DNA of 64,000 bases from Magallana gigas (GCF_963853765.1 NC_088859.1:33170001-33234000); one strand, 5' to 3'; positions 2,384 through 55,038 are shown, counted from the first letter of the stretch. The notes: generated by a model from the sequence alone, not told the origin. Numbers and translations: made by a program.

Positions 2384-2965
2384 CTGTTCCTGGATGTTTC
2401 TTTTAACTTTGCAATCGAAGGAACAAGCTACGGAGAGTTTGTCTTTACTGTCTATAGTTATACCGCCAGGCATATAGTAGTCAAACAGTGGATAGGGCTC
2501 TCTCTGGTAGGCGCAAATTGTGACTGTGTTTTAAAATTTCTAATAATTTTTTACGCCTATTTTTTTCAGTGATATGTAAATCCCTTTGGATATTTACATT
2601 TTGCTCCGGTAGATTTTCAGGCAGTGAGGCAACGTATAGAATATGCTTTGTTTGTTGGTTGCCCAGACCATTTGAAATGCCAACATCTTTGACCATTGTG
2701 TGTAAACTGTCATTCAAAATCAATCGATATTTTTGCCATATTTTCAATGTCAGCAACGGTAGAGCATATCGCTCCCGTTATTTGTAGTGGCTAAGTAATC
2801 ATAACGTAAGCACTCGTATTTTTTTTAACCGATGTAAATGTTAACCTGCCCAGACCCTTCCGGGGGGGGGGGGGGGGTTGCATTTGCCGTCATTTATGCA
2901 TGTCAGTAATCTATGGTCTAGTTCGTGAAGTTTGGTCACTTTCTTGGTGGCCCAATGACCAGTTC
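2384..2965 (-). pseudogene. RGN: Regucalcin pseudogene (remnants of coding exons 2, 3 and 4)
   Basis: Exon-2 remnant ~2844-2965 (VTKLHELDH..INDGKC..GRVWAG, with the GGGG tract expanded to a long G run). Exon-3 remnant ~2598-2770 ([22 protein letters not shown], frameshifted). Exon-4 remnant ~2384-2520 (DYYMPGGITIDSKDKLSVAC..PGTG followed by a GT donor). Exons 1 and 5 were not found. Confidence 0.85.
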
Positions 2966-3180
2966 ACATTTTTAACGTGAACCACAAACCCTACTGTTTC
3001 TTCTAAAGAGACAAACCTTATTTCATAACGTAAAAGTTATCAAACTTTAATTCCTTGGTCGATCCTTGTCAATTTTTGATGCAAATGCGAGATTAATGGT
3101 CCACCTATTGGGTCTTTTAGTCAAATACGGACAGACGTACATAATATCAATATTTTTTTGGAACATACGAAATGTCCGTT

Positions 3181-3473
3181 TTAAGGAACATGGTCACGGT
3201 TTTGGTCAAAAAATATTTTCCGATTTTAATTTTTACAATGCTTCAGTAAGGCATTTTAATGGGCAATCCAAAATTTAGTTATAAGCGGGTTACAGAGCTT
3301 ACAATTCTTAGCTTAAAAGTTTGTAAACAAAGCTTTTGTTTACATTTTAACTGTTGAAGTGAAAATTCCAGTTTTATACCTAAAATGAATGTGTTAAACG
3401 TTAGGAACTGTTTATTTATGCTTTAATTGAAGAAGATAGACAAATTAGCTCGAAAAAGAGTTTTTTACTTTCA
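3181..3473 (+). mobile_element. 5' part of a MITE related to the 51091-51561 element
   Basis: Starts TTAAGGAACATGGTCACGGTTTTGGTC like the left TIR at 51091 and shares internal motifs (GTTATAAGCG, ACAGAGCTTACAATTCTT, TGTAAACAAAGCTTTTGTTT). It is cut off by the Helentron-type element at 3474. Confidence 0.55.
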
Positions 3474-51090: not shown

Positions 51091-51561
51091 AATGGACATG
51101 GTCACGATTTTGGTCAAATTCTATTTTTCTGTTTTTATTATTTACAATGCTTTAGGAATGCATTTCTAATGAACAGATGAAATTTGAGAGTCAGTCATTG
51201 AGTTATAAGCAAAAATTAATGGCTAGCGATTCTTTGTCATGTAAACAAGGCTCGTGCCCTGTTTTTGTTTACAAATATTCAAAATACATGTAAAAAACAT
51301 TTTCAAGCTGATTTGATCGTATTCCTATTCATTTTGAGCATGAATAAACAGTTCCTAACAATGAACACATTCTTTTTATGTCTAAAACTGGAATTTTCAC
51401 TTCAACATTCAAAATGTAAACAAAAGCTTTGTTTACATAGCAAAGAATTGTAAGCCCTGTAACTCGCTTATAACTCAACGAATGACACTCAAATGCCGGT
51501 TGCCTATTAAAAATGCCTTATTAAAGCATTTGAAACATTAAAATCGTGACCATGCATCATT
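51091..51561. mobile_element. ~470 bp MITE
   Basis: AATGGACATGGTCACGATTTT is inverted against AAAATCGTGACCATGCATCATT. Related to 3181-3473. Confidence 0.65.
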
Positions 51562-52084
51562 TTTATATACTAAACGCAGTAATAACTTTACTTCTTGCAT
51601 TTTCAATCAAAAAATTAAATGATAAAATTGTATAAAATTGTTGGACTTTTATAATGTGCAATGAGTATATAAATCAGATAAGGAATATGCCATAAATAGA
51701 TAATTTAATTTAAAAAGAGAGTAAAGAACAGCGGGTCTATACTTCAGGGTGGGAGATGTTCCTCAAGCACCTGTGGCTTCAATCAGATCCTCTAAATGTT
51801 AATTACAGAATTTCTTCATCATTAAAGTTTTAAATATAAATTCTTGGACATGAATGCAGCTTTTATTGCGGATCGTGTATTATTTACTGATTCGTTTTCA
51901 TTATGTGGTTATTGACAACGTCGTCAACAATTTTCAATTTAAAAAAAAAATTAAAAATACCATGTAAAAATTTATTCAATAAAAAAGAACATTTTTAATA
52001 CTAGTATATGATAAAAACTCTGCCTTGGAGTAAGTTCGTATAACCATTACTTAAAACGCAATCTCTCTGCAACAGCTCGGCTGC

Positions 52085-55038
52085 CTATCCTTCATACACA
52101 TTGGCGGGGCGCCCCCGCACTCCTAAACCCGTCACCCGGAAAACCGACCCAGTCATCGGATACTTTTCTCTTTCCTCCTCCGTTGATCCCTGCACGCCAC
52201 ACGTCACATACAGTTCATCGAAGTTTTTCCCGCCAAAACAACAAGAAGTTGTTCTTATAGCAGGAATGTCAACAGTTTTCGATTGTTTACCTGCAAAATT
52301 AAACATTTGAATACAGATTTGATTGTATACTTTTGGAAAATTGAAATTATAGAAGTATGTTACGGTCGCTTAAACTTCAAATGAAAACCAACATCCCCTC
52401 ATTCATTAAATCTTCAGGGGGTTTTCAGTTTAAAACATATTCTATAAAGTTCTTGTTTTTTTTTTAAGGTATAAATTACAGAAATACACATGATGAAAAT
52501 GGCAACAGAATTATATTTAGAAATGCCTCACCAGTTGTTGGATCAAATCGAACTATTTTCGCGGCGCCGTAACAAGCAACCCATATTTTATCCTCTGTGT
52601 CAATACACATGCCGTCTGGGTACCCGAGGGTGGGGATTGTCCCCTCTCCAAAATCCACGACCACGCGCTGGTTACCTTTGGAAGGTGAATGCAGACGTTT
52701 GAAAATCGAAATGTAAAAATGATATTCGTCTGACAGATGATATTAAACGACCTTTATTACTGAAAGTTCACACATCAGTTTTTTTACAAAAAAAAATGTT
52801 CAGAAATCACACTTCGTGGCGAAGGCTTCTGATATGAATATCATGGAATGTGTGTAAGATTGATTAATATGAAGTGTGCTGGCGTCCTTCGAAACCTTCA
52901 AAACCAATCCCTATTTTTTGTTGTATAGTTTCCTATCATTGTTTATCCCTTTTTATTATACAAAAAGAGTGCATTTATATGGTGGCATATCTCTGCCCCT
53001 TGTGTGCTAGTTATTTTTCTATTAATTATGTCGACATGCAAGATAAATATGTTGACATGCAAGATAGTTATGTCAACATGCAACATAACTATGTTGACTT
53101 GCAAGAAAACTGCAATCAAAAAAGAGTTATAAAAAATCTCAAATATCGCCAACATGTGACATCCAAGATTCTAGATACGCTACCTACTGATGTCAACATG
53201 CAACTTATTTATGTTAATATGCAACTTCTTTATATCGACATGAAACTTATTTATGTCGACATGCAACTTATTTATGTTGACATGCAACTTAGTTAAGTTA
53301 ACATGCAAGATAAATATGTTAACATGCAACATATTTATGTCGACATGCAACTTAGTTATGTTGACATACAACTTATAAGTTGCATGTCAACATATTTATC
53401 TCGCATGTAATCATAACTAAGTTGCATGTCAACATATTTATCTCGCATGTCAACATAAATAAGTTGCATGTTGACATAAGTAAGTTGCATGTTGACATAA
53501 ATAAGTTGCATATCAGCATATTCATCTTGCATGTTAACATAAATAAATTGCATCTTGACATAAAAAGGTAGCATCTAGCATCTTGGATGTCACAGGTGGG
53601 CGATATTTGAGATTTGTTTAGATTTTTTATAATTCTTATCTAATTGCAATTTTCTTGCATGTCAACATAATTACGTTGCATGTTGACATAATTATCTTGC
53701 ATGTCAACATATTTATCTTGCATGTCAACATATTTGATAGAAAAATAACTTGCACACAAGGGGCAGAGATATGCCACCATACATTTACATGTTCAAACTT
53801 TCCAATTTATCAAATAAATATATTTTTGGGTTGATGTGTCTTTTATTCATAGATATATTTCCTTTGATAATTCAAATTACATAAATCATGTCAAATGGAC
53901 ATACATACATATACATGTAGCACAAGTTAGAATTTTAACATTACACATGCAAAATGGTATTACACAACTACCATACTTACTTATATTGCCCGTCTCAATG
54001 TCGTAGTCAAAGCCATACACTTTCCGGGGAAGTGAGTCGATGTAATACATGGTTTTGTTGTCTGCAGTCCACGCAAGACCGTTTGATATATTGATCTTGT
54101 TTACGCATGCGTGAAGAGAACCGTCAACATCCAATCGAAACAAAGATCCTCTTTCTCTCTCCGGATTGGCTGGTTCCGATTCGTATCCCATGGTTCCTTC
54201 AAAAGTTTAATAAATTTTATGTTGCGAATCATGACTTTTCATAGATACATGTGGATTGTTTTTTCTATCCAAGTAACTTTTCTTGCAATCATTAGCTGCA
54301 ATAATGTCGCCTCTCCGATTTTTCTATCTGTAGATCTAAGAATTGTCTTGATGCTGGGTATACCAAATACTTACCCGCCCATACTCTTCCCCTCGGGTCG
54401 CATTTGCCGTCGTTAAACCGATTTTTTGTTCCTTTGTCTACTTCGTGAAGTTTCGTGATCTTCCGGGAATCCCAATCGACATGAGATAGCGAGCGACCCA
54501 GACCCACAATATAGCCTCCTTTTCTGCATGGAACAACAAACCCTACACTATCATCTACAAGTTCAGAAAAGTTATCGCTTTGAAAGTGTTCCAACTGAAA
54601 CAACATACAGTAGCATTGATGATTTTGTTTCCTCAATGCTATCCACTTTTTATGCTAATTAATACAACTTTTGATTATGATTACCAAGACTTCATATAGT
54701 ATTAAGTATTATTTCACAAATCGCGATCAAATATAAAGCAAGGAACAAGTGCAGGTCATTTCATGCATAATATCATTAAGAATTATATAGGTTGTCAGGA
54801 GTACATTTCAGATCTAGTATTGCGGACGTGATTTTTTTTAACACTATTATTTATTACCGTCAAGTGTACATAATTATGTACCTAGGTGTATCTTTTCGTC
54901 ATTCCCGGTGTCTGGACTCCATCGGTGTACGTCATTGCTCAGAATGTCCACATACAACAGCGAGTTCGTCCTGTCGTCCCAGTGTGGCCCCTCCCCTATT
55001 GACTGACAGCTGTTCTTGACCACCACTTCCACAGACAT
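52085..55038 (-). CDS. RGN: Regucalcin paralog RGN-6 (most canonical copy), 300 aa
   Basis: Exons 55038-54882, 54554-54375, 54196-53981, 52675-52532 and 52290-52085; GT-AG, phase 1, in frame (903 nt). Motifs YYIDSL, PDGMCID, WVACY and [18 protein letters not shown] are closest to vertebrate SMP30. Confidence 0.95.
52978..53781. mobile_element. Foldback-type palindromic element with a 21-bp minisatellite, in RGN-6 intron 3
   Basis: About 200-bp TIRs (TATGGTGGCATATCTCTGCCCCTTGTGTGC...) enclose 21-bp units (ATGTTGACATGCAACTTATTT) that flip orientation near 53385. CATTTA flanks both ends. Confidence 0.85.

What the first reader, a model, noticed from the sequence alone, without database searches (positions are those of the whole stretch)
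2384..55038. Seven-member tandem regucalcin/SMP-30 array with an apparent age gradient
Seen: six same-strand copies with complete exon sets, a pseudogene and an orphan exon-1 piece, spread over 53 kb with conserved intron positions. Known: vertebrate RGN is normally a single-copy Ca/Zn-dependent lactonase involved in ascorbate synthesis, organophosphate hydrolysis and Ca homeostasis. Inference: RGN-6, next to the housekeeping gene UQCRH, is the ancestral copy and the array expanded leftwards, ending in a dead copy. The derived copies may form a diversified lactonase battery for detoxification, microbial lactone hydrolysis or shell Ca handling. None has a signal peptide.
Basis: partly seen in the sequence, partly recalled or inferred. 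Interest (0 to 1): 0.7.

Follow-up and report, generated by a model that had tools for sequence, protein, structure and literature searches.

The report
Pacific oyster regucalcin gene array
The window holds the Pacific oyster's whole regucalcin (SMP30 lactonase) family as a real tandem array of one conserved gene, five fast-evolving copies and one dead copy; all six genes are already in public annotation, so this is an ordinary lineage-specific expansion with some informative details.

Summary
Six complete 5-exon SGL/regucalcin genes, one decayed copy and one exon-1 fragment lie between 2.4 and 55.0 kb. All are on the minus strand, with identical intron positions, all phase 1.

My models of R1-R5 are 100% identical to RefSeq Magallana gigas "regucalcin" proteins, and R6 is 99.7% identical. 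No other regucalcin exon exists in the 564-Mb genome.

The assembly gap (25455-25615) lies in non-coding DNA between R3 and R2 and touches no exon.

The age-gradient reading is only partly right:
- R6, next to UQCRH, is the conserved canonical gene. It is 90-91% identical to orthologues in Crassostrea virginica and Saccostrea and lies outside the R1-R5 clade.
- R5 branches next.
- R1-R4 do not follow position. The youngest pair (R2/R3) is internal, while R1 and the dead copy R0 are old.
- Exon 2 of R2-R5 has been homogenised by gene conversion.

All six copies keep the metal ligands E18, N154 and D204, plus N103. R1-R5 have replaced the substrate lid loop and other cavity residues, which suggests altered substrate range; this is an inference.

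The reference R3 allele has a GT>AT change at the intron-1 donor. Other oysters carry GT there.

The parts
52085..55038 (-). Exons 54882-55038, 54375-54554, 53981-54196, 52532-52675, 52085-52290.
   Evidence: Model. SGL domain on every exon. 99.7% identical to K1QCP2/XP_011439356.1. Its 90% cluster also holds C. virginica and Saccostrea proteins. Groups with Pinctada fucata regucalcin.
43030..45890 (-). R5: derived regucalcin paralogue, 305 aa. Exons 45734-45890, 45173-45352, 44180-44395, 43764-43907, 43030-43250.
   Evidence: Model. 100% identical to XP_034313839.2. Forms a clade with two C. virginica proteins (100/100*).
34854..38972 (-). R4: derived paralogue, 301 aa. Exons 38816-38972, 35993-36172, 35666-35881, 35421-35564, 34854-35062.
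   Evidence: Model. 100% identical to XP_011454610.3 (P0183).
26117..30545 (-). R3: derived paralogue, 308 aa. Exons 30389-30545, 27533-27712, 27215-27430, 26979-27122, 26117-26346. The intron-1 donor reads AT instead of GT (window 30388-30387).
   Evidence: 100% identical to XP_065921835.1. P0375, an exon-1 read-through ORF seen on 17 other contigs, reads ...QLGKQF, which implies GT in other oysters.
20848..24325 (-). R2: derived paralogue, 308 aa. Exons 24169-24325, 22264-22443, 21945-22160, 21710-21853, 20848-21077. An alternative first coding exon at 22592-22607 gives a 262-aa isoform without residues 1-52.
   Evidence: Model. 100% identical to XP_011439353.1. Alternative exon located from P0363/P0367. 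PolyA RNA reads laid on R3 mostly carry R2 letters.
12285..16600 (-). R1: derived paralogue, 310 aa. Exons 16444-16600, 14663-14836, 14308-14523, 12706-12849, 12285-12526. It has a 2-aa deletion and Gln in place of Arg101.
   Evidence: 100% identical to XP_011439350.3 and 99.4% identical to the cloned cDNA product QHI00360.1.
2382..3012 (-). R0: decayed pseudogene. It keeps remnants of exon 2 (about 2846-3012), exon 3 (about 2592-2800, frameshifted) and exon 4 (2382-2483). No exon 1 or exon 5 was found. The catalytic PDGM motif reads PGGI.
   Evidence: tblastn and blastn. Only its exon-2 remnant reaches E < 0.001 in the genome search.
24497..24578 (-). Orphan exon-1 5' fragment (ATG plus about 50 nt of coding sequence and about 30 nt upstream), 172 bp upstream of the R2 ATG, inside the junction between the R3 and R2 duplication units.
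   Evidence: blastn: 82% over 82 nt to R1, 92% over 51 nt to R4, 81% to R2's own exon 1.
25455..25615 (.). Assembly gap (161 N) in non-coding DNA between R3 and R2.
   Evidence: No RGN match next to it. No RNA depth at 25616-26015.
35993..36172 (-). Gene-conversion tract, shown here as R4 exon 2. The same tract lies in R5 (45173-45352), R3 (27533-27712) and R2 (22264-22443).
   Evidence: Exon 2 is 90.6-96.7% identical in nucleotides among R2-R5, against 58-71% for R5 versus R2-R4 in the other exons. Exon-2 dS for R5 versus R2-R4 is 0.21-0.40, while it is saturated elsewhere.
58385..58558 (+). UQCRH (cytochrome b-c1 hinge protein) main exon, head-to-head with R6. It is the only UCR_hinge match in the genome.
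   Evidence: searches (E = 2.4e-14; 63.5 bits), and an AG acceptor just before 58385.

Best explanation
This is the complete regucalcin (SMP30/gluconolactonase, SGL-domain) gene family of the Pacific oyster, arranged as a birth-and-death tandem array on the minus strand.

R6, head-to-head with UQCRH, is the canonical gene. It is under strong constraint and keeps the vertebrate-type substrate lid. R1-R5 belong to an older, faster-evolving derived clade that is shared with other oysters and probably with pearl oysters. Within that clade, R1-R4 are known so far only from Magallana. They arose by repeated unequal crossing-over, and R2/R3 is the latest event.

One copy (R0) has died. One exon-1 fragment marks a duplication junction. 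Exon 2 of R2-R5 has been homogenised by gene conversion.

All six proteins keep the divalent-metal ligands and Asn103, so they are most likely active cytosolic metal-dependent hydrolases. In R1-R5 the lid loop and other residues at the cavity entrance have been replaced, so these copies probably act on substrates other than the sugar lactones of the canonical enzyme.

Shown here: the gene structures, their identity to annotated genes, the phylogeny, the conversion tract and the residue patterns. Inferred: enzymatic activity and the changed substrate range.
For: Structure and family:
- Five conserved exons with SGL matches and a shared intron phase in all six copies.
- The models equal RefSeq proteins.
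- Every regucalcin match in the 564-Mb genome lies in this window.

Selection and expression:
- Purifying selection in every pair where dS could be estimated (omega 0.07-0.24).
- Uninterrupted 300-310 aa ORFs on 1-2.4 kb Logan contigs, which must come from spliced mRNA, exist for R6, R5, R1 and R4. R2 has a 262-aa isoform of this kind.

Phylogeny and rates:
- R6 groups with P. fucata regucalcin. The derived oyster clade excluding R6 has 100/99* support. The R1-R4 clade has 100/99* support and R2+R3 has 100/98*.
- R6 is 91% and 90% identical to its C. virginica and Saccostrea orthologues. R5 is 75-79% identical to its C. virginica relatives.

Gene conversion: exon-2 identity and dS contrast sharply with the other exons.

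Active site:
- E18, N103, N154 and D204 are conserved in all copies.
- E121, P124, Y219 and G266 are kept in the R6 clade but replaced in most or all of R1-R5: E121 and P124 in all five, Y219 to F or L in all five, G266 in R2-R5 only.
- The roles of these residues come from PMC3551927.
Against: - No enzymatic or per-copy expression data were obtained here.
- RNA reads laid on R3 mostly carry R2 letters, so R3-specific expression is not shown. The reference R3 allele has an AT donor.
- The R1/R4/(R2,R3) branching order is unresolved (AU p = 0.35).
- A split of R6 from the derived clade before the oyster/pearl-oyster divergence is favoured, but an oyster-only origin is not rejected (delta lnL 17.6, AU p = 0.095).
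- The apparent restriction of R1-R4 to Magallana rests on the top 120 database hits only.
- The literature treats oyster regucalcin as a Ca-binding, anti-apoptotic protein, which is a role that does not need catalysis.
Confidence: 0.8

Rival explanations
1. One reading: R6 is the founder, and the array grew strictly leftwards by successive duplication of the end copy. Age would then fall from right to left and the array would end in the newest, already dead, copy.
For: R6 is the most divergent copy and R5 the next most divergent. The dead copy is at the left end.
Against: - R2/R3 are the youngest pair (dS 0.14-0.18) and are internal.
- R1, the leftmost complete copy, has dS 0.8-1.1 to R2-R4.
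- R0 is 74-85% identical to R1-R4, so it is no younger than they are.
- The tree gives ((R1,R4),(R2,R3)) or (R1,(R4,(R2,R3))), and neither is monotonic.
- Exon-2 conversion distorts distances.
Confidence: 0.1
2. Some copies, especially R2/R3 on either side of the assembly gap, are assembly artefacts such as uncollapsed haplotypes.
For: A 161-N gap lies between R3 and R2, and these are the most similar pair (93% CDS identity).
Against: - The R2 and R3 units are only about 82% identical over 2.3 kb including introns, and their intron-1 lengths differ (1725 vs 2676 bp).
- Both genes are annotated separately in the C. angulata assembly, on one 56.2-Mb chromosome, and in the older C. gigas annotation.
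- An independent DNA run has contigs matching R3-specific non-coding DNA with 0 differences (table 8).
- An R3-specific exon-1 ORF occurs on 17 other contigs.
Confidence: 0.03
3. R1-R5 are not diversified enzymes. They are regulatory, Ca-binding or anti-apoptotic 'regucalcins', duplicated for dosage or for tissue-specific expression, and the lid changes are neutral drift.
For: A C. gigas regucalcin was reported to suppress haemocyte apoptosis (Lian et al. 2020, cited in PMC11813985). GenBank QHI00360.1 ("regucalcin [Crassostrea gigas]") is 99.4% identical to R1; that it is the cDNA of that paper is my assumption, since the paper was not held. Regucalcin transcripts respond to acidification and heat in bivalves.
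Against: The metal triad and N103 are invariant in all copies and in all relatives sampled, despite 30-43% protein divergence. The changes concentrate in residues that line the substrate cavity in the mouse structure, rather than being spread evenly.
Confidence: 0.2

Closest known systems
Vertebrate SMP30/regucalcin (human 3G4E, mouse 4GN7)
   Same: Each R6 exon searched (exons 1-4) matches PDB regucalcin chains; exon 3 aligns end to end without gaps with mouse residues 117-187. Length is about 300 aa, there is no signal peptide, and E18, N103, N154, D204, R101, E121, P124 and Y219 are all present in R6.
   Different: Here there are six. In R1-R5 the lid loop (positions 120-124), Y219 and, except in R1, G266 are replaced, and R1 also lacks R101.
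Annotated M. gigas / C. angulata regucalcin genes (XP_011439350, XP_011439353, XP_065921835, XP_011454610, XP_034313839, XP_011439356) and GenBank QHI00360.1
   Same: These are the same genes. R1-R5 are 100% identical and R6 99.7% identical to them.
   Different: Public records name them individually, and the older annotation merged R2 and R3 as isoforms X1-X6. I found no paper in the searchable library that describes the array, its two clades or the exon-2 conversion.
Firefly luciferin-regenerating enzyme (5D9B)
   Same: It is an SMP30-family six-bladed propeller that matches the R6 exons. It is a precedent for a lineage-specific family member with a new substrate.
   Different: It is not orthologous to the oyster clade. 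Nothing links the oyster copies to luciferin.
Other bivalve regucalcin-like paralogue sets (Pecten maximus, Mizuhopecten, Mercenaria, Saccostrea, Ostrea)
   Same: Several regucalcin-like proteins per species, often on one chromosome or scaffold. For example, three Saccostrea echinata proteins, including the R6 orthologue, share one 14.4-Mb scaffold, and six Pecten proteins share one 52.7-Mb chromosome.
   Different: The R1-R4 sub-clade has so far only Magallana members. Adjacency and order in the other species were not examined.

Membership tests
SMP30/regucalcin/gluconolactonase (Pfam PF08450 SGL) | SGL domain match above the gathering score across the whole profile | tested here: met
   The R6 exons cover profile positions 1-244 of 246, each at 33-71 bits against a cut-off of 26.3. 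Exons of all six copies score above the cut-off in the genome scan.
SMP30/regucalcin/gluconolactonase (Pfam PF08450 SGL) | Divalent-metal ligands Glu18, Asn154 and Asp204 (PMC3551927) | tested here: met
   Present in R1-R6 and in all 16 relatives aligned. The numbering was checked on a 299-aa fish regucalcin and on PDB alignments. The dead copy R0 has Gly at position 204.
SMP30/regucalcin/gluconolactonase (Pfam PF08450 SGL) | Asn103, critical for catalysis | tested here: met
   Conserved in all six copies.
Canonical sugar-lactone-type regucalcin (orthologue of vertebrate RGN) | Substrate-recognition residues Arg101 and Glu121 and the lid loop ending in Pro124 | tested here: not met
   Met in R6 only. 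R2-R5 keep R101 but have P, M, I or V at position 121 and D or T at 124. R1 has Q101, I121 and D124. R1-R5 should therefore be filed as derived regucalcin-like paralogues, not as canonical RGN.
Canonical sugar-lactone-type regucalcin (orthologue of vertebrate RGN) | Phylogenetic position with canonical regucalcins of other bivalves | tested here: met
   This holds for R6: it groups with P. fucata regucalcin (94/84), and its 90% cluster spans three oyster genera. R1-R5 fall in a separate clade with 100/96* support.
SMP30/regucalcin/gluconolactonase (Pfam PF08450 SGL) | Six-bladed beta-propeller fold | not tested
   Inferred from sequence matches to solved regucalcins (E = 7e-15 for exon 3). No structure prediction was run.
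SMP30/regucalcin/gluconolactonase (Pfam PF08450 SGL) | Metal-dependent lactonase or organophosphatase activity | not testable with these tools
   Needs purified protein.
Birth-and-death tandem gene family with gene conversion | Same-strand paralogues of unequal age, a pseudogene, and a local tract with low dS between otherwise saturated paralogues | tested here: met

The most novel reading that the evidence does not exclude
R1-R5 would represent an undescribed sub-family of SMP30-type hydrolases, found in oysters and possibly pearl oysters. It keeps the catalytic metal site but has a rebuilt and hypervariable lid, evolves about 2.5 times faster than the canonical enzyme, and has diversified to hydrolyse new substrates. 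Candidate substrates are hydrophobic or microbial lactones, algal toxins or organophosphates met by a filter feeder. Segregating null alleles, such as the R3 donor variant, would then show ongoing turnover.
Probability: 0.3. Interest if true: 0.55.

Novelty: new member of a known kind. Interest (0 to 1): 0.33.

Why it matters
Regucalcin/SMP30 is usually treated as a single gene with debated roles: lactonase, calcium regulator or anti-apoptotic factor. Oyster transcriptome papers report "regucalcin" as one entity.

This array shows that the Pacific oyster has one canonical gene and five divergent paralogues with a different substrate lid. Some are so alike (R2/R3; exon 2 of R2-R5) that short reads cross-map between them.

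Expression and functional studies, including the published work on a C. gigas regucalcin, therefore need copy-specific assignment; GenBank QHI00360.1, which I presume is that paper's cDNA, matches R1, the copy that lacks Arg101. The pairing of a conserved metal site with a variable lid offers a simple natural series for studying substrate specificity in SMP30-type propellers.

Beyond that, it is a typical bivalve tandem expansion.

Tried and rejected
UQCRH-RGN synteny and copy order in C. virginica, Saccostrea, Pecten and Pinctada could therefore not be examined.
- The exon-3 profile search of 1.84 billion representatives mostly returned exon-sized fragments. Full-length relatives came from two word searches seeded with database proteins.
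- The spliced models were joined only inside scripts. They were never sent to a search tool. Searches used single exons by reference, or database proteins that proved identical to the models.
- The single read-laying run on R3 could not separate R3 transcripts from R2 transcripts. 17 of the 24 listed variant letters equal R2's letters, and the expected intron joints were not among the rows shown.
- The AU tests did not resolve R1/R4/(R2,R3) (p = 0.35) and did not reject an oyster-only origin of both clades (p = 0.095).
- The paper by Lian et al. 2020 is not held, and a search for 'CgRGN' found nothing relevant.
- No upstream UQCRH exon was located.
- The 196-codon open frame beside the gap has no Pfam match.
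- The haplotype-artefact and all-pseudogene readings were considered and rejected; see the rival explanations.
The gap letters were neither filled nor looked up.

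
Full report
**Setting.** The window is 64 kb, 34.3% G+C, with one run of 161 N at 25455-25615. It is G000:C7:33170001-33234000 in a 564-Mb, 29-contig assembly. Public runs that hold the sequence are labelled oyster. My spliced models are 100% identical to RefSeq Magallana gigas proteins, so this is the Pacific oyster.

**The observation.**
- Clustering all six-frame ORFs by BLASTP gave five families of 6-7 members each, all on the minus strand.
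- In the rightmost copy the five pieces match Pfam SGL (PF08450) at profile positions 1-37, 38-103, 102-172, 157-232 and 202-244, each above the gathering score.
- Aligning the ORFs and reading the boundaries gave six models: R6 52085-55038 (300 aa), R5 43030-45890 (305), R4 34854-38972 (301), R3 26117-30545 (308), R2 20848-24325 (308) and R1 12285-16600 (310).
- Exons 1-4 have the same lengths in every copy (157, 180, 216 and 144 nt), except 174 nt for exon 2 of R1. All four introns are phase 1 at the same positions. All acceptors are AG, and all donors are GT except one.
- The models were joined only inside scripts. Searches used single exons by reference, or database proteins.
- Independent confirmation: XP_011439350.3 equals R1, XP_011439353.1 equals R2, XP_065921835.1 equals R3, XP_011454610.3 equals R4 and XP_034313839.2 equals R5, each at 100%. 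K1QCP2/XP_011439356.1 matches R6 at 99.7%.
- A protein search of the whole genome finds 31 matches, all inside this window: 30 exons plus one remnant. The Pfam scan agrees, apart from two weak hits elsewhere that are not part of an RGN gene.

**The dead copy and the fragment.**
- R0 (about 2382-3012) keeps recognisable remnants of exons 2, 3 and 4, separated by short introns as in R2-R4.
- It has a frameshift inside exon 3 and several stops, and its PDGM motif reads PGGI. No exon 1 or exon 5 is detectable.
- Its exon-3 and exon-4 remnants align only with R1-R4, at 74-85% nucleotide identity, and not with R5 or R6. It is therefore an old member of the R1-R4 group, not a recent addition.
- The orphan piece at 24497-24578 holds the ATG, about 50 nt of exon 1 and about 30 nt upstream. 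It is 82% identical to R1 and 92% to R4.
- It sits in the 447 bp (24423-24869) between the homologous R3 and R2 duplication units. This fits a relic left at a duplication or deletion junction.

**The gap.**
- The N run lies 502 bp downstream of the R3 stop codon and 1130 bp upstream of the R2 ATG.
- Its left flank (25263-25453) aligns with 20064-20266, and its right flank (25616-27855) aligns with 20331-22585 in the continuous R2 unit. The two sides are colinear with a paralogue in which the matching interval is 64 bp.
- No RGN similarity lies next to the gap, and no polyA RNA depth falls on 25616-26015.
- No reading frame depends on the gap. ORFs listed across it come from the N letters.
Physical continuity across it was not tested with reads.

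**Are R2 and R3 artefacts? No.**
- The two units are 82% identical over 2.3 kb, and their intron-1 lengths differ.
- Both genes are annotated in C. angulata on one chromosome and in the older C. gigas annotation.
- A DNA run from another study holds R3-specific non-coding contigs with no differences (table 8).

**Relationships.**
- Protein identity ranks R6 as the outlier (57-62% to all others). R5 follows (61-70%), then R1 (68-71% to R2-R4) and R4 (80-82% to R2 and R3). R2 and R3 are 92% identical.
- Omega is 0.07-0.24 wherever dS can be estimated. dS is 0.14-0.18 for R2-R3, 0.5-0.8 for R4 versus R2/R3, 0.8-1.1 for R1 versus R2-R4, and saturated for R5 and R6.
- Outgroups came from a profile search with exon 3 and from two word searches seeded with database proteins.
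- In the careful tree (47 proteins, LG+C20+F+G4), R6 groups with Pinctada fucata regucalcin (94/84).
- Its sister group (100/96*) joins two Pinctada imbricata proteins to an all-oyster clade of 20 rows (100/99*) that contains R1-R5.
- Inside that clade, R5 sits with two C. virginica proteins (100/100*). R1-R4 form a clade (100/99*) with only Magallana members. R2+R3 has 100/98* support and R1+R4 has 99/92*.
- Forcing R4 with R2/R3 costs 4.5 lnL (AU p = 0.35), so that order is open.
- Forcing all oyster sequences together, which would mean an oyster-only origin of both clades, costs 17.6 lnL (AU p = 0.095). An origin before the pearl-oyster split is therefore favoured but not proven.
- R6 never nests inside the derived clade.

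**Rates.** R6 is 91.0% identical to C. virginica XP_022317561.1 and 90.3% to Saccostrea echinata XP_061175703.1. R5 is 79% and 75% identical to its C. virginica relatives. The derived clade therefore changes roughly 2.5 times faster.

**Gene conversion.**
- Exon 2 is 90.6-96.7% identical in nucleotides among R2-R5. In exons 1, 3, 4 and 5, R5 is only 58-71% identical to R2-R4.
- Exon-2 dS between R5 and R2-R4 is 0.21-0.40, but it is saturated or undefined in exon 1 and in exons 3-5.
- The similarity stops within a few bases of the exon ends. R1 and R6 are not involved.
- Exon 5 of R1 is closest to R4 (79%), while exon 4 of R4 is closest to R2 (86%). R4 is therefore a mosaic, which may explain the unstable R1/R4 grouping.

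**So the age gradient is only half true.** R6 is oldest and R5 next. Left of R5 the order is not positional: the youngest pair is internal, and the left-end copies R1 and R0 are old.

**Active site.**
- The mouse and human structures define Glu18, Asn154 and Asp204 as metal ligands and Asn103 as critical for catalysis. Arg101 and Glu121 (on the lid loop) bind the sugar hydroxyls. Residues 15, 35, 57, 101, 120-124, 265 and 266 form the cavity entrance, and Cys16, Ile202 and Tyr219 lie on the opposite wall (PMC3551927).
- PDB alignments of the R6 exons fix the numbering. Exon 3 aligns with residues 117-187 without gaps, NRFNDGK contains R101 and N103, and YPDGM aligns with residues 202-206, placing Asp204. 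A 299-aa fish regucalcin in my alignment has E18, N103, N154 and D204 at those numbers.
- All six copies, and all relatives examined, keep E18, N103, N154 and D204.
- The R6 clade keeps E121, P124, Y219 and G266, as in vertebrates.
- R1-R5 and the other derived-clade oyster proteins have Pro (Ser in one C. virginica protein) at 120 and mostly a hydrophobic residue or Pro at 121. They have Asp, Asn or Thr at 124. Position 219 is Phe, with Leu in R1 and Tyr retained in one Ostrea protein.
- At 265/266 they have an aromatic residue or His followed by Glu or Asp, except that R1 keeps Gly266.
- R1 also has Gln at position 101, after a 2-aa deletion.
- The lid segment is conserved in the canonical clade and variable in the derived one.
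- I read this as a retained catalytic centre with an altered substrate pocket. This is an inference.

**No signal peptide.** Each protein begins MSVE... or MAVE..., 15 residues before the catalytic Glu, and aligns from residue 2-5 of the mammalian proteins. The upstream open frame of R6 holds no ATG.

**Expression.**
- Uninterrupted ORFs of 300-310 aa on 1.0-2.4 kb Logan contigs can only come from spliced RNA. They exist for R6, R5 and R1 (many each) and for R4 (one).
- For R2 there is a 262-aa isoform. It starts from an alternative first exon at 22592-22607 inside intron 1 and lacks residues 1-52, including Glu18.
- PolyA, strand-specific reads from two 2026 runs cover the R3 exons on the minus-strand side only, at depths of about 1 to 40 in roughly 1% samples of the runs. 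Of 889 and 2235 reads laid, 835 and 2106 are only 95-99% alike.
- 17 of the 24 listed variant letters are R2's letters. Transcription of R2-type mRNA is therefore shown, but R3-specific expression is not.

**The R3 donor.**
- In this assembly the first intron of R3 begins AT (CTAG|ATATGC) where R2 has GT (CTAG|GTATGC).
- A 56-aa ORF in the R3 cluster (P0375, seen on 17 contigs) has R3's diagnostic HHEK motif and reads through the junction as ...QLGKQF. This implies GGT there in other oysters.
- The reference haplotype therefore probably carries a splice-donor variant of an otherwise intact gene. Whether that variant abolishes splicing was not tested.

**Neighbours.**
- The only UCR_hinge match in the genome is at 58385-58558 on the plus strand, 3.3 kb from the R6 ATG and divergently oriented.

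**Literature.** Searches for regucalcin with oyster, C. gigas, tandem duplication or expansion terms found only transcriptome mentions and no description of the array. PMC11813985 cites Lian et al. 2020 on "a regucalcin" that suppresses haemocyte apoptosis in C. gigas. GenBank QHI00360.1 is 99.4% identical to R1. That paper is not held, so the link between it and this accession is my assumption.

**Limits.** Only one reads call was available, and the DNA runs are contigs, so copy-number depth was not measured. No structure was predicted.

**Verdict.** This is a real and correctly located tandem family, already annotated gene by gene. The useful additions are the split into a canonical and a derived clade, the remodelled lid, the exon-2 conversion and the R3 donor variant. 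Interest is moderate to low.

Noticed in passing
window 22592-22607 (-): Alternative first coding exon of R2 (MEKCEG) inside intron 1, with a GT donor. It gives the annotated 262-aa isoform, which is also seen as a Logan mRNA contig. The isoform lacks residues 1-52, including the metal ligand Glu18.
   Followed up: partly
window 48796-50502 (-): Intact single-exon ORF of 568 aa with an N-terminal RING finger and a weak NHL repeat match (TRIM-NHL-like), lying between R5 and R6.
   Followed up: partly
window 4857-6129 (+): Major-facilitator-superfamily ORFs between R0 and R1. The first two are in the same frame and separated by a single stop at 5118-5120. This could be a pseudogene, an intron or an assembly error.
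   Followed up: no
window 24865-25452 (-): A 196-codon frame without stops that runs up to the assembly gap. It has no Pfam match and contains no tandem repeat large enough to account for it. By a rough estimate, chance would give such a frame in about 1 window in 12.
   Followed up: partly
window 28200-30200, peak 29400-30000: A very high-copy repeat in R3 intron 1. Summed contig depth reaches about 1e6 in a DNA run, and polyA reads lie on both strands with many loose ends. This is probably an expressed transposable element, and it accounts for the longer intron 1 of R3 compared with R2.
   Followed up: no
window 31998-33317 vs 37789-38604; 13275-13679 vs 32283-32716: Inverted copies, 77-83% identical, of one repeat family: between R3 and R4, in R4 intron 1 and in R1 intron 3.
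   Followed up: no
window 40866-42143: An earlier scan note (s1-395883) reports a head-to-head pair of stathmin-like genes between R4 and R5. Two ORFs from that stretch had no Pfam match.
   Followed up: no
window 3707-4243 and 53179-53732: Local direct and inverted repeats, 66-87% identical. The first lies left of the MFS ORFs and the second lies in R6 intron 3.
   Followed up: no
window 24535 (-): An upstream ATG, in frame with the R2 coding sequence and 70 codons before the annotated start, is created by a frame-shifted reading of the orphan exon-1 fragment. The annotated R2 protein does not use it.
   Followed up: no
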